Shown: piece by piece, positions 13,983 to 61,925 of the stretch
Position numbering within the stretch: position 1 is the first letter of the stretch
Layout: the number at the start of each line of letters is the position of its first letter
Assembly (NCBI RefSeq): GCF_032444005.1
Contig: NC_091288.1
Location: forward strand, 187,302,001 to 187,366,000
From: Ranitomeya imitator
Lineage: Eukaryota
Direction: 5' to 3'
DNA: 64,000 nt
Notes under the pieces: generated by a model
Told to the model about the DNA's origin: nothing
Seen by the model: the letters and a program-made list of their open reading frames with translations, nothing else
The model's database searches: none
Translations under genes and position numbers: made by a program

Positions 13983-14434
13983 ATTATTTCTACATGGAAG
14001 GTTCACAGCTGTATGTGGGGATTTCTGCATTACAGGGGGCATACAGCGGTATACAGATGGGCACTGCATTGTTATATGGAGGTATACAGAATTACACGGG
14101 GTTCCCAGCACCATCTGGAGACATTACTGCAATATACGGAGTGTAACATGTCGGCGCTGCACTGTAACTGTCTGCATAATGTGGCACAATCATTTGTCAG
14201 TAAGTTGTAGTATATGGGGGTACTGTGCACTATACAGATGAATAGCAGCACTATATTGGAGTATACTGCAGCACATGAAGGGTAAACAGAGCTACATGAA
14301 CACATAGAGCACTATATGAGGGTGCACTGCGGTATATGGCGCTTCACAGCACTATTTAGATGTATTCAGCATTATAAGTGCTTTACAGCGCTATATGGAG
14401 GGTGCTGAAAAGCGAAATATCAGCTGCAGAACCA

Positions 14435-14990
<556 letters not shown>

Positions 14991-15020
14991 TCGGCTCCGT
15001 GCTCTGCTCCTCACCCCAAA

Positions 15021-15036
15021 GGCTCTTCTAAGAGCC
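15021..15036 (+). terminator. H2B histone 3' stem-loop
   Basis: CCCAAA-GGCTCT-TCTA-AGAGCC-ACCCA. Confidence 0.95.
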
Positions 15037-15731
15037 ACCCACAGCCTCGCTATAAGAGCCACCCACAGCCTCGCTATAAGAGCCACCCACAGCCTCACTA
15101 TAAGAGCCCCCCACAGCCTCACTATAAGAGCCACCCACAGCCTCACTATAAGAGCCCCCCACAGCCTCACTATAAGAGCCACCCACAGCCTCACTATAAG
15201 AGCCCCCCACAGCCTCACTATAAGAGCCACCCACAGCCTCGCTATAAGAGCCACCCACAGCCTCGCTATAAGAGCCACCCACAGCCACACTATAAGAGCC
15301 CCCCACAGCCTCGCTATAAGAGCCCCCCACAGCCTCACTATAAGAGCCCCCCACAGCCACACTATAAGAGCCCCCCACAGCCTCGCTATAAGAGCCCCCC
15401 ACAGCCACACTATAAGAGCCCCCCACAGCCTCGCTATAAGAGCCCCCCACAGCCTCGCTATAAGAGCCACCCACAGCCTCACTATAAGAGCCCCCCACAG
15501 CCTCGCTATAAGAGCCCCCCACAGCCTCACTATAAGAGCCACCCACAGCCTCACTATAAGAGCCCCCCACAGCCTCACTATAAGAGCCCCCCACAGCCTC
15601 ACTATAAGAGCCCCCCACAGCCTCGCTATAAGAGCCCCCCACAGCCTCACTATAAGAGCCCCCCACAGCCTCACTATAAGAGCCCCCCACAGCCTCGCTA
15701 TAAGAGCCCCCCACAGCCTCACTATAAGAGC
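15029..15731. repeat. H2B-downstream 24-bp minisatellite, 29 copies
   Basis: (TAAGAGCC[A/C]CCCACAGCC[T/A]C[G/A]CTA)n from 15029. The terminal TAAGAGCTG is at 15725, i.e. 696 = 29 x 24 nt later. Confidence 0.97.
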
Positions 15732-16166
15732 TGCGGCTGCTCCGGTGTCCTCTCCCGTCTCCCCGATGTGTCTGCTCGCACCGCCCGGGGCTCTGCACCT
15801 GGTGATGAGGGAGATGGGGAGAAAACCTCAGGAATAATAATCTGGGCATTTCTCAGCGAGTTGCTGTGTATTCAAGGACTTCTCTTATTTAACCCCTTGC
15901 TGCACAGATCTCGGCATTCTGGGGGAACATTTATTATGATTCCTGTTCTCCACTTGCTGTGATGTGCCCGTGTGTCTGACATGGAGACGATCAGATCGTC
16001 CCTTTCCCATCACAATCAATATTGTGGAGACGATATACTGGTCAGGGACGTATCCTACAAGAGACATTTCCCAGCAGATCCCACCATGTCTCCCCATTAT
16101 AGATCAGTCCTACGGCTGCAGGCAGGAGGTCAGTGATGGGAAATGTACGATCATGTGTAGATCCTC

Positions 16167-16326
16167 ATAGTCTATAATCTTGCGAGCAGGGCCCTCATTC
16201 CTCTTGGTATCTATGTTGAACTGTGCTTTCTGTTATGCTGTAATATCTATTGTCTGTACAAGTCCCCTCTATAAATTGTAAAGCGCCGCGGAATATGTTG
16301 GCGCTATATAAATAAAATTATTATTA
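16167..16326 (+). mobile_element. L2-type 3' UTR/tail fragment
   Basis: CTTGCGAGCAGGGCCCTCATTCCTC...TGTAAAGCGCCGCGGAATATGTTGGCGCTATATAAATAAAATTATTATT, similar to the 3' UTR of the L2 at 18909-19070. Unit 2 copy at ~49046-49205. Confidence 0.75.
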
Positions 16327-18098
16327 AGATTGCTGAGAGTTCCCTGCTCAGAACATTACCCTGTGGTGTCGGGATCTCACAGGTCAGACAGTTACATTAT
16401 CGGTGTCACATCCTCCTCACAGGATTCCTGCTCAGTTACTGATCGTCCTTCTGTTCTATCACTTTTCCTCCCCCGCTTCATCCAGTGTCAGGACTGGCGT
16501 CTCTCGGGCAATATATCCACATGTAGAAGCTCCGAGAATGAGGAGGGGAACAACGATTCTTAGGAGAAATATCCCAATATAATCGCAGGATAAGATCCTC
16601 TAGCACCGGATGTAATGATGTATAACGAATGTCACAGATCTCGGAGGAGACTGTTCAGGGTGACAAACGGAGAAGCCAAAAACAAGAGTCAGACCCAAAC
16701 ATCAACCACCATCAGCAAAAATGAAAATAGTGGCACCATCAATGATCGGGTGCCACCATGTGCCCGGAAAGCAAAGGGTTAATATAACATGAGATAAAAT
16801 CACTGCAGTGCAGAGAGCTCCGATCACAAATCTGACTGTAAGATGCCCAAGTACTGGTGACCTCATCATAGCACAAATGTCACTAATGCCGGGAATATAA
16901 GGACTGATCTCCTGCAGAAGAGCCAGGAAAAAAGAGCAAGTGGGATGAGTCCTGGCCCGGGGTTAATGGAATATTCTCTGTGAAAACCGAAGATCCTGAG
17001 GACGGGGCCGGTGTCGGGCTGTGTCTATGCCGGTGTGAGATCCCCTGTGCGGCTGCCTGTAATATCCGCAGTGGTCACAGCCTGGGCAGTGTCCGTTATA
17101 TCCTCCTGACATATACTGGGGCGGTGTCTGCTCCCCTTACTATTTTTGATCTCCCGTCATTCATCTTGGAACTGGTCCGCTGACGTCGTGTGATGCGGTC
17201 TCTTCATATTGATCTATAAAATATAACACGGATTTACAGGGGAACAGGCTGTACAGTAATATTCTCCTGATCAGATCCGTGTGGGGTGAATAGGGCAGCG
17301 AATATTCACAGGGGATGTGGCTGTGTGAGGCAGCTGGATAGACGGACGCCCTGTGTACCGGGTACGGAGACTCCTGTGTGATGACCACGTCCCGGACACT
17401 AATGTTTCGGATGGATGGCGCCTCTGAAGACTATTAGAACCTCCCCAGAATAATAATGGCCACCGATAAGAAAACCGATCCCCGTGTTTGGGGGCAGACA
17501 GATGGGAGGACAGGACCCGGTATTATCGGTGATCGCCCCTCCAGCAGAGGGGCCGGTAATAATCCGACGGACAAAGAACAGAGATTGAGCGGGAAATTCA
17601 AAACCATCAACGGATCTGCAATAAGCCAATGAGCGAGAGACATCCGCAGGCGCCGACCAATCCCAGATACAGGAATAGCCGCCTCCATTTAACTCTTTAG
17701 TGGCCGTGTGTGCTGACCCCCACTACACACTCGCTTTACAGATCCGGCGACTTCCCCCACCCGAGACCCGGCAGCGTCACATCAGGCTCCGGGCAGAACA
17801 TAGGAGACTTGTCTCAGTCAGGCTGTGATAGGATCAGCGCGGACACCACAGGGGATCTGCACAGGATAATAAGCGGGTGAGAGAGGAGCCTCCGCCTGTG
17901 CAGATGGAGCGGAGGAGAAGCACTGACAGGGATTAACCCCTCACCCGCCCGACTGTCATTGTAATTTATTGCTGATAGCAGTCACAAATTCAACAAGTGC
18001 AAACTACAAATCAACAGAATATTTCTGCATTTCCTTCTGCTCCATGACAAATATCTGTTTTCACCCCTTATCTATTCTGTTCAAAACAAACGTTTTCT

Positions 18099-18692
<594 letters not shown>

Positions 18693-18721
18693 GCGCTGCC
18701 GCCAATCTCTACCAAACCAAA

Positions 18722-18761
18722 GGCTCTTCTAAGAGCCACCCACACCGTCATCACAAGAGCC
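18722..18761 (+). terminator. H2A histone 3' stem-loop (18722-18737) and HDE
   Basis: GGCTCT-TCTA-AGAGCC-ACCCA, then CAAGAGCC at 18754-61. Confidence 0.92.
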
Positions 18762-18908
18762 GGCGCCGCCTATCTCGGGGGTCCTCACGTGAGGCTGATG
18801 GTACATACACCATTGACGCCACCAGTTCGTGTGTTGGTGCACATATCCACAGAATAATAGGAGATGAATGGGTCAATCCCACACGGAGTCTCAGACCCTC
18901 AGGTGGAG

Positions 18909-21900
18909 TATTATTATTTATTATATTTGTTCCATGGCGCTTTACATGTGAGGAGGGGTATACATAATGAAAACAAGTACAATAATCTTAAACAATACAA
19001 GTCATAACTGGTACAGGAGGAATGAGGACCCTGCCCACGAAGGCTCACAATCTACAAGGGATGGGTGAGAATACAGTAGGTGAGGGTAGAGATGGTCATG
19101 CAGCGGTTTGGTCGATCGGTGGTAACTGCAGGTTGTAGGCTTGTCTGAAGAGGTGTGTCTTCAGGTTCTTTTTGAAGGTTTCAATGGTAGGCGAGAGTCT
19201 GATGTGTTGTGGTAGAGGGTTCCAGAGTAGGGGTGATACGCGAGAGAAATCTTGTATACGATTGTGGGAAGAGGAGATAAGAGGGGAGTAGAGTAGGAGA
19301 TCTTGTGAGGATCGGAGGTTGCGAGTAGGTAAGTACCGGGAGACGAGGTCACAGATGTATGGAGGAGACAGGCTGTGGATGGCTTTGTACGTTAGGGTTT
19401 TATAGTGGAGTCTCTGGGCAATGGGGGGCCAGTGAAGGGATTGACAGAGGGGAGAGGCCGGGGAATAGGGGGGGACAGGTGGATTAGTCGGGCAGCAGAG
19501 TTTAAAATAGATTGGAGGGGTGCGAGAGTGTTAGAGGGGAGGCCACAGAGCAGGAGGTTGCAGTAGTCAAGGCGAGAGATGAGGGCATGGACTAGGGTTT
19601 TTGCAGATTCATGGTTGAGGAATGAACGGATTCGGGAAATATTTTTGAGTTGAAGTCGGCAGGAAGTGGAAAGGGCTTGGATATGTGGTTTGAAGGAGAG
19701 ATCAGCGTCAAGGATTACCCCGAGGCAGCGAGCTTGTGGGACTGGGGAGAGTGGGCAGCCATTTACTGTAATGGATAGGTTCGTTGGGGGGGGGTCGCTT
19801 GAGATGGGGGAAAGATGATGAATTCTGTTTTGTCCATGTTAAGTTTCAGAAATCTAGCGGAGAAGGATGAAATAGTGGACAGACATTGAGGGATTCTGGT
19901 TAGAAGGGAGGTGATATCTGGTCCAGAGATGTAGATCTGTGTGTCGTCAGCATACAGGTGATACTGAAAGCCATGAGATTCTATGAGCTGTCCCAGGCCA
20001 AAGGTGTAAATGGAGAAGAGCAAGGGCCCAAGGACTGAACCTTGTGGGACTCCGACAGATAGGGGGCGAGGTGAGGAGGTGGTGTGTGAGTGGGAGACGC
20101 TGAATGTCCGGTCTGTTAGGTATGATGAGATCCAGGATAGGGCCAAGTCTGCGATGCCAAGGGAGGAGAGGGTTTGTAATAATAGGGAATGGTCCACTGT
20201 GTCAAAGGCAGCCGACAGGTCGAGGAGGACAGAGTAGTGTCGCTTGCTCTTGGCGGTTAAGAGGTCATTGGTGACTTTAGTTAGGGCAGTTTCGGTGGAA
20301 TGGTGTGACCGGAAGCCAGATTGTAGGCGGTCAAAGAGGGAGCAAGAAGAGAGATGGGAGGACAGTTCAAGGTAGACGTGTTGTTCCAGTAGTTTTGAGG
20401 CAAAGGGGAGAAGTGATATAGGGCGATAGCTAGATACAGAGGATGGGTCAAGAGAGGGCTTTTTGAGGATAGGTGTGATTGAGGCATGTTTAAAGCTTGA
20501 GGGGAAAACACCAGTTGTTAGTGATAGGTTGAAGAGATGGGTTAGGGTTGGGATGAAGATTGTGGTGAGGTGTGGGATGGGAGTGGGTCAAGTGCACAGG
20601 TGGTGAGATGCGATCTTGAGAGTAGAGTGGAGAGTTGATCTTCTGTAATGGTGGAGAAGTTGGTTTTGGAGGTGGAGGGCTGGGAAATCGGGAGGAAGAG
20701 CTCTGGGGGTTTTTGACCAAAACTGTCTCTAATACTATCAATCTTCTGCTTGAAAAATGAGGCAAAGTCTTCAGCAGAGATAAGTGGGGAGGGAGGAGGT
20801 GCTGGGGGACGGAGGAGAGAATTGAAGGTGTTGAATAACTGTTTAGGGTTGTGAGAGAGAGAGGAGATGAGAAGTAGGTTTGTTTAGCTGTGGCGAGTGT
20901 GGTCTTGAAAGTAGTGAGGGACTGTTTGAATGCGATGAAGTGCTCGTTAGAGTGGGATCTTTTCCATCTGCGCTCAGCAGCCCTGGAAGCTCGCCTCAGT
21001 TCTTTGGTCAGGCTGGTGTGCCAGGGCTGTCTATTGATTTTGCGAGCTTTGGTATGTGTAAGTGGGGCAGCAGATTCCAAAGCTAGAGCTATTGTGGTGT
21101 TATATAGAGCAGCAGCGTCATCCGCATTGTGTATGGAACTTATGCCTGTGAGGGGGAGGAGGGATTCAGAGAATGAGTGTAGGTCAAGATGTTTAATATT
21201 TCTGCGAGGGTGTGAAAGTTTGTGGGGTGGGGATTGTAGACATGGAGTGGAGAGAGATGAGAATGTGAGAAGGTTGTGGTCAGAGAGTGGAAGAGGTGAG
21301 TTAGAGAGGTTAGATAGAGAGCAGAGGCGGGTGAAGATGAGGTCCAATGTGTGACCGTCTTTGTGAGTGGCTGCAGAAGACCATTGAGTGAGGCCGAAGG
21401 AGGAAGTGAGAGTTAGAAGTTTAGTGGCAGCTGAGAGGGAAGTGTCAATGGGGATGTTGAAGTCACCCATGATGATAGTGGGGATGTCCGCAGAAAGGAA
21501 ATGAAGTAGCCAGGTGGTGAAGTGGTCAAAGAAGATGGTGGCTGGCCCTGGGGGGCGGTAAATGACAGCCAGTTGGAGGTTGGTGGGGGAATAGATGCGC
21601 ACAGAGTGCACCTCAAAGGAAGGGAGGGTAACAGAGGGTGGCAGTGGGATTGGGGTGAAGGAACAGTTATCTGACAGGAGAAAACCAACTCCTCCGCCAT
21701 GTTTGCTGCTGGGGCGGGGTGTGTGGGAAAGGTGGAAGCCACCATAAGAGAGTGCAGCAGGGGAGACTGTGTCAGAAGGGGTGAGCAAGGTTTCGGTGAT
21801 GGCGAGGAAGGAAAGTTTGGTAGTAACAAAGAGATCATGGATGTAGGAGAGCTTGTTGCAGACAGAGTGGGCGTTCCACAGAGCTCCTGTTAGTGGGACT

Positions 21901-21950
21901 GGGGAGGCGGGGGATGTGCAAATGGGTATAAGGTTAGAGAGGTTACGGAC
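18909..21950 (-). mobile_element. Decayed L2-clade LINE (APE endonuclease + RT), unit 1
   Basis: Minus strand: LWNAHSV..AITET, YRPP, GDFNI, GHTLDLIF, SDH (APE); [16 protein letters not shown] and YADD (RT); 3' UTR ending in (AAT)n at 18909. Frameshifts and internal deletions. 5' boundary approximate. Confidence 0.9.
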
Positions 21951-22458
21951 GTTTGTGCTAGAGCGAGTGTCGTCTGCGAAGCTCGCAGGAAATGTCCCCT
22001 CATTAGTGTCTGATACTCCGCGCTGAGGTCTACATGTAGTTAGGACGTGCCGGAGTATCGGACTGGGCGGGTGATTCTCCTCATCAGTGACGGCGCCTTC
22101 TCTGGGAGGACAGGACTCCGCGCTGTTCCGGGTGTGACCGGATTGTGATCTCCGCTATCAGCAGTGACCGGTAACAATCCTTCCGAGATTATGAGCAGGA
22201 AATTCAAATCTCCCAACGGATCCTGTGATCAGACAATGAGCGGGCAGCCTTGGGAAAGCTCAGCCTTGAAAATAGGAAGTTAAATGGAGGAGAGACGTCT
22301 ACGTACATCAGGCACACATACGTGTCTCCTCCGTTTAACTTCTTATTTCCCGTGTTCCAGCTGATCTTTCATTATCAGAGTATCCACAGATGCGGCACCT
22401 TCACCCCAGGCCCCGGTAGCGCTGTGTCCCCTATACACCGCAAACAATGTATACACTG

Positions 22459-22461
<3 letters not shown>

Positions 22462-22506
<45 letters not shown>
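22462..22506. repeat. (AT)n microsatellite
   Basis: About 22 AT units; longer in unit 2. Confidence 0.95.
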
Positions 22507-47105: not shown

Positions 47106-47582
<477 letters not shown>

Positions 47583-47620
47583 TCGGCTCCGTGCTCTGCT
47601 CCTCACCCCAAAGGCTCTTC

Positions 47621-48587
47621 TAAGAGCCACCCACAGCCTCGCTATAAGAGCCACCCACAGCCTCGCTATAAGAGCCACCCACAGCCTCACTATAAGAGCC
47701 CCCCACAGCCTCACTATAAGAGCCACCCACAGCCTCACTATAAGAGCCCCCCACAGCCTCACTATAAGAGCCACCCACAGCCTCGCTATAAGAGCCCCCC
47801 ACAGCCTCGCTATAAGAGCCACCCACAGCCACACTATAAGAGCCCCCCACAGCCTCGCTATAAGAGCCACCCACAGCCTCGCTATAAGAGCCCCCCACAG
47901 CCTCACTATAAGAGCCACCCACAGCCTCACTATAAGAGCCCCCCACAGCCTCACTATAAGAGCCCCCCACAGCCTCACTATAAGAGCCACCCACAGCCTC
48001 ACTATAAGAGCCCCCCACAGCCACACTATAAGAGCCCCCCACAGCCTCGCTATAAGAGCCCCCCACAGCCTCGCTATAAGAGCCACCCACAGCCACACTA
48101 TAAGAGCCCCCCACAGCCTCGCTATAAGAGCCACCCACAGCCTCACTATAAGAGCCACCCACAGCCTCACTATAAGAGCCCCCCACAGCCTCACTATAAG
48201 AGCCCCCCACAGCCTCGCTATAAGAGCCACCCACAGCCTCGCTATAAGAGCCACCCACAGCCTCGCTATAAGAGCCACCCACAGCCTCACTATAAGAGCC
48301 ACCCACAGCCTCACTATAAGAGCCCCCCACAGCCTCACTATAAGAGCCACCCACAGCCTCACTATAAGAGCCCCCCACAGCCTCGCTATAAGAGCCACCC
48401 ACAGCCTCGCTATAAGAGCCCCCCACAGCCTCACTATAAGAGCCCCCCACAGCCTCACTATAAGAGCCCCCCACAGCCTCGCTATAAGAGCCCCCCACAG
48501 CCTCGCTATAAGAGCCACCCACAGCCTCACTATAAGAGCCCCCCACACCCTCGCTATAAGAGCCCCCCACAGCCTCACTATAAGAGC
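47621..48587. repeat. H2B-downstream 24-bp minisatellite, 40 copies
   Basis: The terminal TAAGAGCTGT at 48581 is 960 = 40 x 24 nt after 47621. Confidence 0.97.
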
Positions 48588-51178
48588 TGTGGCTGCTCCG
48601 GTGTCCTCTCCCGTCTCCCCGATGTGTCTGCTCGCACCGCCCGGGGCTCTGCACCTGGTGATGAGGGAGATGGGGAGAAAACCTCAGGAATAATAATCTG
48701 GGCATTTCTCAGCGAGTTGCTGTGTATTCAAGGACTTCTCTTATTTAACCCCTTGCTGCACAGATCTCGGCATTCTGGGGGAACATTTATTATGATTCCT
48801 GTTCTCCACTTGCTGTGATGTGCCCGTGTGTCTGACATGGAGACGATCAGATCGTCCCTTTCCCATCACAATCAATATTGTGGAGACGATATACTGGTCA
48901 GGGACGTATCCTACAAGAGACATTTCAGGGAAGACCAATTCTGCCCTTCCCAGCAGATCCCACCATGTCTCCCCATTATAGATCAGTCCTACGGCTGCAG
49001 GCAGGAAGTCAGTGATGGGAAATGTACGATCATGTGTAGATCCTCATAGTCTATAATCTTGCGAGCAGGGCCCTCATTCCTCTTGGTATCTATTTTGAAC
49101 TGTGCTTTCTGTTATGCTGTAATATCTATTGTCTGTACAAGTCCCCTCTATAAATTGTAAAGCGCCGCGGAATATGTTGGCGCTATATAAATAAAATTAT
49201 TATTAAGATTGCTGAGAGTTCCCTGCTCAGAACATTACCCTGTGGTGTCGGGATCTCACAGGTCAGGTAGTTACATTATCGGCCGTCACATCCTCCTCAC
49301 AGGATTCCTGCTCAGTTACTGATCGTCCTTCTGTTCTATCACTTTTCCTCCCCGCTTCATCCAGTGTCAGGACTGGCGTCTCTCGGGCAATATATCCACA
49401 TGTAGAAGCTCCGAGAATGAGGAGGGGAACAACGATTCTTAGGAGAAATATCCCAATATAATCGCAGGATAAGATCCTCTAGCACCGGATGTAATGATGT
49501 ATAACGAATGTCACAGATCTCGGAGGAGACTGTTCAGGGTGACAAACGGAGAAGCCAAAAACAAGAGTCAGACCCAAACATCAACCACCATCAGCAAAAA
49601 TGAAAATAGTGGCACCATCAATGATCGGGTGCCACCATGTGCCCGGAAAGCAAAGGGTTAATATAACATGAGATAAAATCACTGCAGTGCAGAGAGCTCC
49701 GATCACAAATCTGACTGTAAGATGCCCAAGTACTGGTGACCTCATCATAGCACAAATGTCACTAATGCCGGGAATATAAGGACTGATCTCCTGCAGAAGA
49801 GCCAGGAAAAAAGAGCAAGTGGGATGAGTCCTGGCCCGGGGTTAATGGAATGTTCTCTGTGGAAACCGAAGATCCTGAGGACGGGGCCGGTGTCGGGCTG
49901 TGTCTATGCCGGTGTGAGATCCCCTGTGCGGCTGCCTGTAATATCCGCAGTGGTCACAGCCTGGGCAGTGTCCGTTATATCCTCCTGACATATACTGGGG
50001 CGGTGTCTGCTCCCATTACTATTTTTGATCTCCCGTCATTCATCTTGGAACTGGTCCGCTGACGTCGTGTGATGCGGTCTCTTCATATTGATCTATAAAA
50101 TATAACACGGATTTACAGGGGAACAGGCTGTACAGTAATATTCTCCTGATCAGATCCGTGTGGGGTGAATAGGGCAGCGAATATTCACAGGGGATGTGGC
50201 TGTGTGAGGCAGCTGGATAGACGGACGCCCTGTGTACCGGGTACGGAGACTCCTGTGTGATGACCACGTCCCGGACACTAATGTTTCGGATGGATGGCGC
50301 CTCTGAAGACTATTAGAACCTCCCCAGAATAATAATGGCCACCGATAAGAAAACCGATCCCCGTGTTTGGGGGCAGACAGATGGGAGGACAGGACCCGGT
50401 ATTATCGGTGATCGCCCCTCCAGCAGAGGGGCCGGTAATAATCCGACGGACAAAGAACAGAGATTGAGCGGGAAATTCAAAACCATCAACGGATCTGCAA
50501 TAAGCCAATGAGCGAGAGACATCCGCAGGCGCCGACCAATCCCAGATACAGGAATATCCGCCTCCATTTAACTCTTTAGTGGCCGTGTGTGCTGACCCCC
50601 ACTACACACTCGCTTTACAGATCCGGCGACTTCCCCCACCCGAGACCCGGCAGCGTCACATCAGGCTCCGGGCAGAACATAGGAGACTTGTCTCAGTCAG
50701 GCTGTGATAGGATCAGCGCGGACACCACAGGGGATCTGCACAGGATAATAAGCGGGTGAGAGAGGAGCCTCCGCCTGTGCAGATGGAGCGGAGGAGAAGC
50801 ACTGACAGGGATTAACCCCTCACCCGCCCGACTGTCATTGTAATTTATTGCTGATAGCAGTCACAAATTCAACAAGTGCAAACTACAAATCAACAGAATA
50901 TTTCTGCATTTCCTTCTGCTCCATGACAAATATCTGTTTTCACCCCTTATCTATTCTGTTCAAAACAAACGTTTTCTATTGGGTGAGAAACTCATTTGAG
51001 CAAGGAGCAGTAATAAGCTCCGCCCTCGGCAGCTCATTGGCGGTTCCTCAAGACTCTTCCTGATTGGCAGCTTCAGATTCATCCAATGACAGGAGAGGAG
51101 GGCGGAGCAGCAGACTATACAAGGCGACACAACACGGTCTCTTCTCCATACGATTTTCTGTCTTTAGTTATCGGCATC

Positions 51179-57395: not shown

Positions 57396-58068
57396 TTGTG
57401 TTCTCTTCTGTCCTCACAACCCAAAGGCTCTTATCAGAGCCGCCCACATCTCAGTGAGAGGCTGCACCTTCCTATTCCTGCGCTATGGTTCCTGGTGGTC
57501 TTAAAATCTAGGTTAATAAATGGTTTAGAAACCTTTCACGAGCCACAAACCTCTTCGTGTAAGGCTAAATGTACCTCGCTGTGCTGTGATCTTCTGTCTC
57601 CTGTGCGCTGGTGACTTCTCTACGCTCTTATGTGATTTCGGCAGTGAACAAGGCAAACGCATGTGCAGAAAGACGGATGATGATACCTGACACTAACGGA
57701 TAAACACTGTTCCGCGGTCCCGGGTACCGACCTCTGATGCTGGGTATGGGCGGATGGTTCTGTTGTAGCTTTGGGTGTTTGAATTTCCCGCCTTGTGGCT
57801 TCAGTTTCTTCCTGCAGCTCGTGGTGTCAGGACTGGCGGCTGTAGGACGATGTTTGTGTGCAATGATGGCTTGTTCTGGAAGAGTGCCTCACATGTATCT
57901 AGGCTTCCCAGATAAGGGAGCAATATTCACTGGATAGAGCTGGAGCTCAGCAGAGCTGTGGGTTCCCGGTGGAAGGAGTGAAGCCGCATTATCCAGATTC
58001 TGGGATGTGCCTGCAGTGTGTGATCTGGGACCAGGGTCTTTTCCATTATCTTGACCTAGAAATACTAA

Positions 58069-58375: not shown

Positions 58376-60212
58376 TAACCTGGTTTTCCCAAGCAGATCC
58401 CTCTACAGCTCTAATAACGGGGCAACTCCCGGCGTTTTCTAAATTAAGATGTTGTCCTAAGATGCTGCTTTTATTGGGCGCTGATTAGTATCGGGTGCAG
58501 CGTCTCTGCAGGGCACAATATCCCCCGTGCGGCTGCCTGTAGTATCGGTCACAGCCTGGGACGTGTCTTCTATACTCTCCCCTCTTATTTTCCTCCCCGT
58601 CTTTCCATACTAGAGCCGGCACCGCAAACTTCGGGTGATGCGGTTTCTTCTCATTGATCTATTACATAAACCTCACAGATTTATGGGGACTATATCCGCA
58701 CACTGCCTCCCAGAGACCCCTCTATGCAGACAGTACAGACCCCGGAGTGATGCGGTTACTACAGTCCTGCCGTGAGATGAATGTGTTGATTCTGCAACTT
58801 GATGTTATACTGAACAGGGGGCAGCGGATATTCACAGGGGATGTGGCTGTCTGAGGCAGCTGGATGGACGGACGCCCTGTGTACCGGGTACGGAGACTCC
58901 TGTGTGATGGCCACGTCCTGGACACTAAGGTTTCGGATGGATGGCGCCTCTGAAGACTATTATAACCTCCCCAGAATAATAATGGTAACCGATAGAGTTG
59001 AGCGACCTTGACCTTTTTAGAGTCGAGCCGGGTTTCGCGAAACCCGACTATCTCAAAACTCGGGTCGAGTGAAATCGGCCGATTACGGCGAAAAGTCGGG
59101 ATCGACCGAAACACGAAACCCAATGCAAGTCAATGGGGCAGCATAGTCGGCAGTGAGTGGGGGCCAGGAAAACACCTAGAGTGCCCATTTTAATGTCAAA
59201 ACCATCCATTCTTCTTAATGAAGCTTGTCAAGCGTAATTTACCTTATAATAATTGGAAGGCATTTGAAATTGGGGGTCATTTGGCTAAAGTTGTGGTGGG
59301 TAGGGCTGGTTCAAGTAATTAGTGGGCCCAGGAAATCTGGACCACGTCACGGCAGTGGAGCAGGGAGAGGTAAGTATTTCAACTTTGCAATTGCTGTGAA
59401 CCTGAGCAAGCAGGGGGGGCCCACTTGTTGGCATTGGCACTGGCACAGGGCCCCTCAAAGTACAGCGGTGTGTTTGCACAGCGGGGGCGCCTCCCACCGG
59501 CAGCAACACTTTTGCGTACTATGAGAGGCCCTGTGCCAGTGACGTCGCCAACTAGTATTCCTCCCCCCACCTGATGAAGGAACCTGCACTTTCATCTGCA
59601 CCTTCCTGTTTGTCCCCGTGTAAGGTGGTATGGTATGCGGGAAGAGCAACCTGACTTTCAGCAGGGTCACAATGTTGTTGTGTAGCGTGCACGGGGAATG
59701 TTGCGTTATGGGTCAATGTACCAGCAGACTCATCTATCACTGGCTGGGCAATGGGCACGATGAAGTGGAAACACAGATATAGGCCCAAAGAATAAAGTGG
59801 GCTAAATGCAGTTCAAAATTGGTAACACAGGAATAACCAGGGGGCATTGCAGTGGAGGACAACTGGAATGAGAGGCTGACACAGAGAGTAGGGCCAAATC
59901 AGTAAGTAGTCGAAATGCAGTTCAAAATTGGCAACCGTAGTAAACAGGCGGCACAGCTTTGTTCAGTGGAGGAGAACAGCAAGGAGTGGCAGACACCGAT
60001 AGTAGGCCCCAACCCAACTAGTAGGCCAAATGCAGTCTAACATTAACAACTACTTAACGAGAGCCTGAAAATGGAATTTCAGGACAGGAAACCAGGAGAA
60101 CAGCAAGGAGTGGCAGACACCGATAGTAGGCCCCAAACCAACTAGTACGCCAAATGCAGTTGTTCCATTTAACCACAATTTAATGAGAGCCTGAAGATAG
60201 AAGCTCAGGAAA

Positions 60213-60510
60213 GGCAACCTGGGGAACACCTTGGAGTGTAACACACCATCTCTCTCCACCCCATACCCATTTTGTAGGCCTAATGCAGTGTACTTTTCTA
60301 CAACTACTAAACGAGAGTCGGAAGACCGAAGCAATGGCAAGGAAACCTGGGGAACACCTTGGAGTGTAACACACCATCTCTCTCCACCCCATACCCAATT
60401 TGTAGGCCTAATGCAGTGTAGTTTCCAAGAACTACTAAACGAGAGCCGGAAGATCGAAGCTCTGGAAAGGCAACCTGGGGAACACCTTGGAGTGTAACAC
60501 AACCTCTCTC
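60213..60510. repeat. 128-bp tandem repeat (~2.3 copies) inside hAT
   Basis: GGGGAACACCTTGGAGTGTAACACA at 60221, 60349 and 60477. Confidence 0.85.
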
Positions 60511-60964
60511 TACACCACGGAAGGGCTGATTCTTAGGAAGGAAGGCTGTTGGAAATAAGCATTGCGCGTCCGAGGGTGATTATATTCTTATTAGGTATAT
60601 ACTCACCCTCGGACGCGCCCTGCTTCTTTATTTGTAATGAATGTTTATTTGCAATGTGGTTTTGACTTACTCTATTATTTTTGTAATTAATGATTTAATT
60701 ATTTTCATTGTTTTACATCTTCTTGGCAATAATATAAAGAAGACGCGACAGGACAACACTCGGTGGATGCCATATCTGTGTTTTCAATTTAAAAAACCTT
60801 TCAGTTAACTACTTGCAGGAGAAAGTAATTGTAGCTGGTGGCCATTTTTTGTACTGTTCCAGATTTTAGTTGTGTGTTTGTTTTTAATGTTAAAATGTCT
60901 GCATTTGATATCTCACCACTATTTTCTTTTTTATAATTAAAATACTTATTATTTTATTTTATGA

Positions 60965-61925
60965 TGTTGGTTCAAGGGGTACACGGGCAGCAGTAGACAG
61001 GTCACTGGAGGCCTAGTGGAAGGAGGGAACGCAGACAGGCTTCGAAGGCCTAACATAATATATTGGGCTGGCTGTAGGCAATTTATAATTGGTTCCATGG
61101 GAACACGGGCAGCAGTAGACAGGTCAGTGGAGGCCTAGTGGAAGGAGTGACGGCAGACAGGCATCAAAGGCCTAACATAATAACATTGGGCTGTTGGCAA
61201 TTTTAAATTGGTTCCAGGGGTACACGGGCAGCAGTGGTCTGGTCAGTGTAGTAGTAGTTGAAAGAACGGACCGCAGACAGGCTTCGAAGGCCTAACATAA
61301 CAAAATTGGTCTGGCTGTAGGCACTTTTAAATTGGTTCCAGGGGTACACGGGCAGCAGTGGTCTGGTCAGTGGAAGTCTAGTGGAAGGAGTGACGGCAGA
61401 CAGGCTTCGAAGGCCTAACATAACAAAATTGGGCTGGCTGTAGGCACTTTTAAATTGGTTCCAGGGGTACACGTGCACCAGTGGTCTGGTCAGTGTAGTA
61501 GTAGTTCAAAGAACGGACCGCAGACAGGCTTCGAAGGCCTAACATAACAAAATTGGGCTGGCTGTAGGCACTTTTAAATTGGTTCCAGGGGTACACGGGC
61601 AGCAGTGGTCTGGTCAGTGGAAGTCTAGTGGAAGGAGTGACGGCAGACAGGCTTCGAAGGCCTAACATAACAAAATTGGGCTGGCTGTAGGCACTTTTAA
61701 ATTGGTTCCAGGGGTACACGGGCAGCAGTGGTCTGGTCAGTGGAAGTCTAGTGGAAGGAGTGACGGCAGACAGGCTTCGAAGGCCTAACATAACAAAATT
61801 GGGCTGGCTGTAGGCACTTTTAAATTGGTTCAAGGGGAACACGGCCAGCAGTGGCCTGGTCAGTGTAGTAGTTGTAGAAAGAACGGACCGCAGACAGGCT
61901 TCGAAGGCCTAACATAACAAAAATG
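60965..61925. repeat. 123/124-bp tandem repeat (~8 copies, two subtypes) inside hAT
   Basis: GGTTC(C/A)AGGGG starts at 61210, 61334, 61457, 61581, 61704 and 61827, with two more degenerate copies upstream. Confidence 0.9.

What the first reader, a model, noticed from the sequence alone, without database searches (positions are those of the whole stretch)
15021..15733. Independent 24-bp array seeded from the H2B stem-loop pushes the best HDE 696 nt away
Seen: the unit runs from TAAGAGC in the stem-loop 3' arm to the next TAAGAGC. Only the last copy reads TAAGAGCTG (the good HDE); the copy at the normal distance reads TAAGAGCCA. In unit 2 the good HDE (TAAGAGCTGT) is 960 nt away. Inference: slippage between the shared AAGAGC of stem-loop and HDE created the array. 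H2B processing would then rely on a 6-nt HDE, while 29-40 extra AAGAGCC arms could compete for the GGCTCTT 5' arm. Two different genes growing arrays from the same signal suggests a general mechanism.
Basis: partly seen in the sequence, partly recalled or inferred. Interest (0 to 1): 0.75.

Follow-up and report, generated by a model that had tools for sequence, protein, structure and literature searches.

The report
Repeat array grown from H2B cutting signal
In the mimic poison frog, the 24 letters between the histone H2B mRNA hairpin and its downstream cutting signal are copied head-to-tail 29 and 40 times; close relatives still have the single copy, and the array is most likely a tolerated by-product, though no RNA data could be read.

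Summary
Directly behind both H2B genes of the window lies a 24-bp array of 29 and 40 units. It starts inside the stem-loop 3' arm. It ends in the only TAAGAGCTG word, 696 and 960 nt from the arm.

The window is Ranitomeya imitator (aRanImi1, CM064365.1).

R. variabilis (2 units), Dendrobates tinctorius (5 units) and Anomaloglossus baeobatrachus (1 unit) have the unexpanded arrangement with matching flanks. The array is therefore young and independent of the older H1 array. A paralogous R. imitator cluster has at least 321 units.

The functional reading is only partly supported.
- The junction copy keeps the AAGAGC core at the normal distance. By a proxy U7 duplex energy it is weaker than the ancestral HDE, but equal to the neighbouring H2A and H4 sites.
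- Predicted competition for the 5' arm comes from the nearest copy only. It is a near tie, and it is stronger still in the unexpanded R. variabilis allele.

The scan had already noted this array elsewhere in this genome.

The parts
14610..14990 (+). Histone H2B gene, unit 1. The CDS at 14711-14985 is masked as N and was left unfilled.
   Evidence: ORF and N-terminal translation; N run.
15021..15036 (+). H2B 3' stem-loop: 6-bp stem GGCTCT/AGAGCC with loop TCTA. The 5' flank is CCAAA and the 3' flank is ACCCA (15037-15041, expected cleavage site).
   Evidence: Rfam RF00032 gives 32.4 bits, E=2.7e-07, just under the gathering score of 34.
15029..15724 (+). 24-bp array of 29 units. The first unit is made of the loop's TA, the real 3' arm, ACCCA and the spacer.
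   Evidence: TRF; unit parsing, which found 6 unit types differing at 3 positions.
15053..15060 (+). Junction (hybrid) HDE at the normal distance, with the AAGAGC core 17 nt after the stem. It reads TAAGAGCC: the purine core is kept and the 3' half is replaced.
   Evidence: Duplex energy with the U7 5' region is -11.9 kcal/mol.
15725..15740 (+). Ancestral HDE (TAAGAGCTGCGGCTGC), now 696 nt from the arm.
   Evidence: It matches the HDE and flank of D. tinctorius and R. variabilis H2B. Duplex energy is -16.5 kcal/mol.
47202..47582 (+). Histone H2B gene, unit 2. The CDS at 47303-47577 is masked as N.
47613..47628 (+). H2B stem-loop, unit 2.
47621..48580 (+). 24-bp array of 40 units.
   Evidence: It shares its first six units and its last unit, in order, with unit 1.
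48581..48596 (+). Ancestral HDE, unit 2 (TAAGAGCTGTGGCTGC), 960 nt from the arm.
   Evidence: Duplex energy is -20.9 kcal/mol.
18722..18763 (+). Comparator: the H2A stem-loop and its HDE AAGAGCCGG (18755-18763). The core sits at the same 17-nt distance and is also followed by C.
   Evidence: Duplex energy is -11.6 kcal/mol.
16311..16316 (+). First AATAAA after the array (unit 2: 49190). It is a possible poly(A) signal for any read-through transcript. This is inferred only.

Best explanation
This is a young minisatellite that grew out of the H2B 3'-processing signal.

Origin. In the ancestor the stem-loop 3' arm and the HDE core each carried the word AAGAGC, 24 nt apart. R. variabilis still has this arrangement. 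A slippage or unequal-exchange event between the two words duplicated the 24 nt. Later unequal exchange expanded and reshuffled the array, giving 29, 40 and at least 321 units in the copies read here.

Why it is probably tolerated. The duplication joins inside the shared word, so every junction rebuilds the AAGAGC purine core exactly 17 nt after the stem. The H2B pre-mRNA therefore still offers SLBP a full stem-loop. It also offers U7 snRNP a core site at the ruler distance, about as strong as the H2A and H4 sites next door. The array is thus most likely a tolerated by-product. The original, stronger HDE at the far end is at most a fail-safe site.

Shown: the anatomy, that the single-copy layout came first, the age, and the copy-number variation. 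Inferred: the slippage mechanism, that cutting happens at the first unit, and neutrality.
For: Anatomy: the period equals the arm-to-HDE distance, and there are 7 extra in-phase letters at the end.

Unexpanded alleles in relatives:
- R. variabilis, L013/L015/L016.
- D. tinctorius, L002-L006.
- A. baeobatrachus, L014.
- The flank after the array is 86% identical to D. tinctorius and 92% identical to the paralogue L007.

Turnover: the flanks of the two window units are 98.7% identical. The interior unit order is barely more alike than shuffled (LCS 23 against 19.1 +/- 1.25). L007 holds at least 321 units.

Tolerance:
- Duplex energies with the U7 5' region are -11.9 for the junction HDE, -11.6 for H2A, -11.5 for H4 and -6.8 for H3.
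- The same AAGAGCCGG H2A site is kept in P. terribilis.
- Only one stem-loop match lies in 14986-15860.

Literature:
- SLBP stabilises U7 binding (PMC5435866).
Against: - Correct cleavage at 15041 is therefore assumed, not seen.
- The frog's own U7 sequence is unknown. The energies use the human/mouse 5' region as a proxy.
- The junction HDE is 5-9 kcal/mol weaker than the ancestral one.
- The predicted probability of the canonical stem falls from 0.83 to about 0.30 once several units are present.
- The H2B coding sequence is masked, so I could not check that these genes are intact.
- Only a few R. variabilis units were seen. An array that collapsed back to one unit would look the same as a never-expanded allele.
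Confidence: 0.6

Rival explanations
1. The array harms the gene. With only a 6-nt U7 match at the ruler distance and a rival hairpin for the 5' arm, array-bearing H2B genes are processed poorly. They would give read-through or polyadenylated transcripts, and other H2B copies would carry the load.
For: - The junction HDE is 5-9 kcal/mol weaker than the ancestral HDE.
- The canonical stem probability is 0.30, against 0.83-0.85 for nine other histone 3' ends.
- An AATAAA lies about 580 nt after the array.
- An earlier scan note reports one H2B copy that lost its hairpin at an array edge (unchecked).
Against: - The neighbouring H2A, H4 and H3 sites are equally weak or weaker.
- The rival fold is favoured by only 0.76 kcal/mol.
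- An even stronger rival fold exists in the unexpanded R. variabilis allele.
- HDEs buried in hairpins that SLBP opens are normal (PMC1635294).
- Earlier scan notes report the array behind many H2B genes of this genome (unchecked), which is hard to square with a strongly harmful change.
Confidence: 0.22
2. The array is used. For example, it could be a landing pad that concentrates U7 snRNP at the histone locus, or a run of fail-safe cleavage and termination sites ending in the strong HDE.
For: - Each unit carries an ACCCA context and the purine core at the ruler spacing.
- The strong HDE is kept at the end of the array in the three copies read here.
- In mammals a strong HDE can be cleaved without SLBP (PMC5435866).
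Against: - Copy number ranges from 29 to at least 321, and the interior is rapidly reshuffled. This looks unconstrained.
- The array is absent from every relative examined.
- The AAGAGC word is no better conserved than other columns in the long array, where it is lost in roughly 3% of units.
Confidence: 0.08
3. The array is an assembly or sequencing artefact, and its copy number is invented.
For: Long tandem arrays are error-prone in assemblies.
Against: - The same array, with different unit orders and numbers, appears in two adjacent units and on another chromosome of the assembly.
- The units differ at defined positions in a non-random order.
Confidence: 0.02

Closest known systems
Canonical U7-dependent histone 3' signal (stem-loop, ACCCA, HDE; Rfam RF00032)
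   Same: The stem, the UYUN loop, the CCAAA and ACCCA flanks, and a purine core 17 nt after the stem are all present at the first unit.
   Different: The part of the HDE that pairs beyond the core (TGTGG...) is displaced by 0.7-1 kb here, and by at least 7.7 kb in a paralogue.
Laboratory insertion mutants between stem-loop and HDE (H2a+4, H2a+12; Scharl and Steitz, as described in PMC7026596)
   Same: Sequence is inserted between the hairpin and the consensus HDE. The molecular-ruler logic applies.
   Different: The natural insertion is in phase and rebuilds the core HDE at the original distance, so the ruler need not shift. The insertion is also tens to hundreds of times longer.
The 33-36-bp array behind histone H1 in the same cluster
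   Same: It is a tandem array that starts at a histone stem-loop and carries HDE letters.
   Different: Each H1 unit holds a complete HDE. The H1 array is shared by Dendrobates, Phyllobates, Ranitomeya and Anomaloglossus, so it is old. The H2B unit derives from H2B's own flank and was seen only in R. imitator.
Ordinary minisatellites born by slippage at short direct repeats
   Same: It has a 24-bp unit, microhomology at both ends, fast change in copy number and reshuffled variant units.
   Different: The two seed words are functional RNA signals: a hairpin arm and a U7 site. Both are complementary to GCUCUU-type sequences, so the seed is built into the gene.
Satellite DNA between newt (Notophthalmus) histone clusters, transcribed by read-through on lampbrush loops. 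This is from my own knowledge of Stephenson/Diaz/Gall 1981; the related newt satellite 2 paper is PMC2114352.
   Same: An amphibian histone cluster is interleaved with tandem repeats lying downstream of histone genes.
   Different: As far as I know, the newt satellite is not derived from the processing signal. Read-through was not tested here.

Membership tests
Histone 3' UTR stem-loop / U7-dependent processing signal (RF00032) | 6-bp GC-rich stem, 4-nt U-rich loop, and CCAAA 5' and ACCCA 3' flanks | tested here: met
   The letters are at 15016-15041. Rfam gives 32.4 bits, E=2.7e-07, which is 1.6 bits under the curated gathering score.
Histone 3' UTR stem-loop / U7-dependent processing signal (RF00032) | Purine-rich HDE complementary to the U7 5' end, about 15 nt after the cleavage site | tested here: inconclusive
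   The AAGAGC core is present at the right place. Pairing beyond the core is lost. The duplex energy of -11.9 kcal/mol equals that of the neighbouring H2A and H4 sites. The frog's own U7 is not known.
Histone 3' UTR stem-loop / U7-dependent processing signal (RF00032) | The transcript actually ends after ACCCA | not testable with these tools
Minisatellite born by slippage at microhomology | Head-to-tail units of 10-100 bp with high identity | tested here: met
   TRF finds period 24 with 29.3 and 40.3 copies, and no indels at period 24 (unit 1) or 48 (unit 2).
Minisatellite born by slippage at microhomology | The single-copy ancestral state carries a short direct repeat exactly one period apart | tested here: met
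   R. variabilis H2B has AAGAGC...AAGAGC 24 nt apart in 2 units.
Minisatellite born by slippage at microhomology | Copy number varies between copies, and the array is absent from relatives | tested here: met
   There are 29, 40 and at least 321 units within R. imitator. No array was found in R. variabilis, D. tinctorius or A. baeobatrachus H2B.
Functional U7-binding or termination array | Sequence or copy-number constraint, or factor binding | tested here: not met
   No constraint was seen. Factor binding is not testable here.

The most novel reading that the evidence does not exclude
Most or all replication-type H2B genes of R. imitator may have had their consensus U7 site moved 0.7 kb to tens of kb away and yet still make normal H2B mRNA. 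That would be a natural whole-family experiment showing that a 6-nt purine core at the ruler distance plus SLBP is enough in vivo. Alternatively, this frog may make much of its H2B from read-through or polyadenylated transcripts, or its U7 may have changed to fit.
Probability: 0.15. Interest if true: 0.7.

Novelty: new variant of a known kind. Interest (0 to 1): 0.42.

Why it matters
It is a clean, datable example of a gene's own RNA-processing signal seeding a tandem array. The seed is two functional words that resemble each other because both are complementary to GCUCUU-type sequences.

It also offers a natural allelic series of 1, 29, 40 and over 300 units. That series could be used to ask how much HDE-U7 pairing, and what hairpin context, histone 3'-end cleavage needs in vivo.

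If the array proves neutral, as I expect, it is mainly a case study in how repeats are born at a very repeat-prone locus.

Tried and rejected
- A first H1 look-up with a wrong start codon found nothing. The corrected one placed the window in aRanImi1.
- The assembly table in PMC12822217 is visibly shifted in the stored text, so I did not use it for species names.
- PMC46907 (Xenopus U7) is not held. I therefore used the human/mouse U7 5' region from PMC7026596 as a proxy and did not type a frog U7 from memory.
- Three literature searches found no description of arrays derived from histone 3' signals.
- I left the masked H2B stretches (N) unfilled and read only the 3' flanks of H2B genes in other loci.
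- I did not look up H3 or H4 proteins, because they are identical in humans and would fetch human contigs.
- I could not reach the start of the L007 array, which runs off the locus.
- Rejected: derivation of the 24-bp unit from the H1 array. They share only AG(A/T)GCCACC, whereas the unit matches R. variabilis H2B's own flank at 22 of 24 positions.
- Rejected: a special role for the G/A variant in the first units. That position is unpaired in the rival fold.

Full report
**What is there**

The window holds two units of about 32.6 kb of a tandem histone cluster. All genes are on the + strand, in the order H1, 33-bp array, H3, H4, H2B, 24-bp array, H2A.

The middle of each H2B coding sequence is masked as N (14711-14985 and 47303-47577). 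I left these stretches unfilled.

- The H2B stem-loop GGCTCTTCTAAGAGCC lies at 15021-15036 and again at 47613-47628, with CCAAA before it and ACCCA after it.
- Rfam's histone stem-loop model matches at 15016-15060 with 32.4 bits and E=2.7e-07. This is just under the gathering score of 34, and it is the only match in 14986-15860.
- Starting at the TA of the loop, a 24-bp unit repeats without indels. There are 29 units at 15029-15724 and 40 units at 47621-48580.
- All units begin TAAGAGCC. The only TAAGAGCTG follows the last unit, at 15725 and at 48581.
The count of "extra arms" is 28 and 39, not 29 and 40.

**Where the window comes from**

- The H1 protein of the window is encoded exactly once in the gene-position index, on GCA_032444005.1 chromosome CM064365.1. 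The fetched locus L011 is identical, base for base, to window 15537-36169.
- That assembly is aRanImi1, Ranitomeya imitator.
- GCA_039654945.1 is Dendrobates tinctorius.
- GCA_958301615.1 is an older R. imitator assembly.
- GCA_051348905.1 is R. variabilis, identified from protein names and matching contig lengths.

**Origin**

It exists in three species.

- R. variabilis: two H2B units read stem-loop, ACCCACACCCTCACTAG, AAGAGCTGCTGCC. There is one copy of the unit, with two AAGAGC words exactly 24 nt apart. One of them (C for G) is the majority letter in the long paralogous R. imitator array.
- D. tinctorius: five units read stem-loop, 17 nt, AGAGCTGTGGCTGCTCC. The sequence after the HDE aligns with the window's sequence after the array at 86% identity.
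- A. baeobatrachus: H2B is also unexpanded.

The consensus HDE at the far end of the array is therefore the original one, and the array was inserted between it and the hairpin. The period equals the distance between the two AAGAGC words, and the array carries 7 extra in-phase letters at its end. This is the signature of a duplication joined inside that shared word. Slippage or unequal exchange is an inference, but a well-founded one. One caveat is that an array collapsed back to a single unit would look the same. Only a few R. variabilis units were seen.

**Independence and age**

- The H1-type 33-36-bp array is present behind H1 in D. tinctorius, R. variabilis, P. terribilis and A. baeobatrachus.
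- The 24-bp array was found only in R. imitator.
- The 24-bp unit matches H2B's own single-copy flank, not the H1 unit.

The two arrays therefore arose separately and at different times.

**Turnover**

- Within R. imitator, a paralogous cluster on CM064364.1 (L007) has at least 321 units. That array runs off the fetched locus and ends in the same TAAGAGCTGCGGCTGCTCC flank at 92% identity.
- In the window, the flanks of the two units are 98.7% identical.
- The two arrays share only the first six units and the last unit in order. The interior order is barely more alike than shuffled (LCS 23 against 19.1 +/- 1.25).
- Earlier notes of this scan report further copies of 33, 41, 82 and about 117 units, and one of at least 38 kb. 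I did not check these.

**Function: HDE strength**

[quoted passage not shown] SLBP on the hairpin stabilises U7 binding (PMC5435866).

Because the duplication joins inside AAGAGC, the first junction rebuilds that core exactly 17 nt after the stem. Only the 3' half of the HDE is replaced.

I used the U7 5' region shared by human and mouse as a proxy. This fits the AGAGCTG consensus of the frogs' own HDEs. Predicted duplex energies:

| Site | Energy (kcal/mol) |
|---|---|
| H2B junction copy (R. imitator) | -11.9 |
| H2B terminal HDE, unit 1 | -16.5 |
| H2B terminal HDE, unit 2 | -20.9 |
| D. tinctorius H2B | -17.7 |
| H2A, same cluster | -11.6 |
| H4, same cluster | -11.5 |
| H3, same cluster | -6.8 |

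The H2A site reads AAGAGCCGG, with the same C after the core, and is the same in P. terribilis. So H2B has lost pairing relative to its ancestor. It has not fallen below what neighbouring genes use.

**Function: competition for the 5' arm**

- In an equilibrium folding model, the probability of the canonical stem falls from 0.83 with one unit to about 0.30 with five or more units.
- The rival is not the mass of distant arms. It is the nearest copy, which forms an extended hairpin with the 5' arm.
- The ensemble difference is 0.76 kcal/mol, within model error.
- As a control, nine other histone 3' ends give 0.83-0.85. The unexpanded R. variabilis H2B gives 0.04-0.19, because its 5' arm and loop pair with the HDE itself over 9 bp.
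- HDEs buried in hairpins that SLBP opens have been shown for mouse genes (PMC1635294).

Such competition is therefore not specific to the array, and it says little about function.

**General mechanism**

A third array exists. Behind an H2A gene of A. baeobatrachus, a 21-bp unit holding the whole HDE is repeated 9.2 times with no mismatch. Its borders are a CCCCG word, not the arm/HDE word. Histone 3' ends in these frogs do seem prone to such expansions. The specific arm-to-HDE slippage fits only H2B.

**What could not be done**

Where H2B transcripts end is unknown.
- The frog's own U7 could not be fetched.
- The H2B coding sequences were masked, so their integrity was not checked.
- I found no paper describing arrays made from histone 3' signals.

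**Verdict**

The origin model and the independence from the H1 array are well supported by relatives. The claimed harm to processing is unproven and weakened by the controls. The best reading is a young, fast-changing minisatellite that is tolerated because it rebuilds the core signal at the right place. The scan had already noted the same array family elsewhere in this genome. What this report adds is the set of unexpanded alleles in relatives that fix which state came first, the energy and folding controls, and the third array.

Noticed in passing
L014:9043-9236 (- strand), Anomaloglossus baeobatrachus GCA_048569485.1: Behind an H2A gene, a 21-bp unit containing the whole HDE (CAGGAGCTGG) is repeated 9.2 times with 100% identity, right after stem-loop-ACCA. 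It is flanked by a CCCCG direct repeat. This is a third, very young array at a histone 3' end.
   Followed up: partly
L007:1-7699, R. imitator CM064364.1: A paralogous cluster carries at least 321 units (7.7 kb or more) of the same 24-bp array, with other variant letters (G at unit position 8, C at 15). AAGAGCTG occurs four times in the stretch read: the terminal HDE and three other copies. The start of the array, and whether an H2B gene precedes it, lie outside the locus.
   Followed up: partly
L009:7600-7700 and L010:7560-7660, R. variabilis: In these units the H2B gene, its stem-loop and its HDE are missing. The repeat-rich sequence that normally lies upstream of H2B is joined directly to the flank that normally follows the HDE (TCTCCCCGAGGTG...).
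   Followed up: no
L015/L016:3410-3425, R. variabilis: The H2B stem-loop is preceded by CCCCGAAGG instead of the usual CCAAAGG. In the folding model its 5' arm and loop prefer to pair with the HDE (9 bp) by 1.6 kcal/mol.
   Followed up: partly
L002:11492-20304 (also L003, L005, L006), D. tinctorius: About 245 diverged copies (76% matches) of the H1-type 36-bp unit lie downstream of H2A. This is much larger than the 7-30 copies directly behind the H1 gene in the same units.
   Followed up: no
L013:10001-23619, R. variabilis: An annotated 240-aa 'H1' gene model spans 13.6 kb and crosses a 157-bp x 41 satellite (15946-22484). It is probably a mis-joined model.
   Followed up: no
window 19763-21838 (- strand): Long ORFs of 144 and 432 aa between H2A and H1 look like retroelement remains. 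I did not examine them.
   Followed up: no
window 57426-57441 and 60185-61922: After the second H2A the unit does not simply repeat. There is a lone H4-type stem-loop at 57426, and 123-128-bp tandem repeats at 60185-61922.
   Followed up: no
window 14300-14420: The sequence just upstream of the H2B promoter is made of degenerate repeats of about 30 bp (CACTATATGGAGGGTGC-like). These resemble 30-31-bp arrays seen in R. variabilis loci L001 and L009.
   Followed up: no
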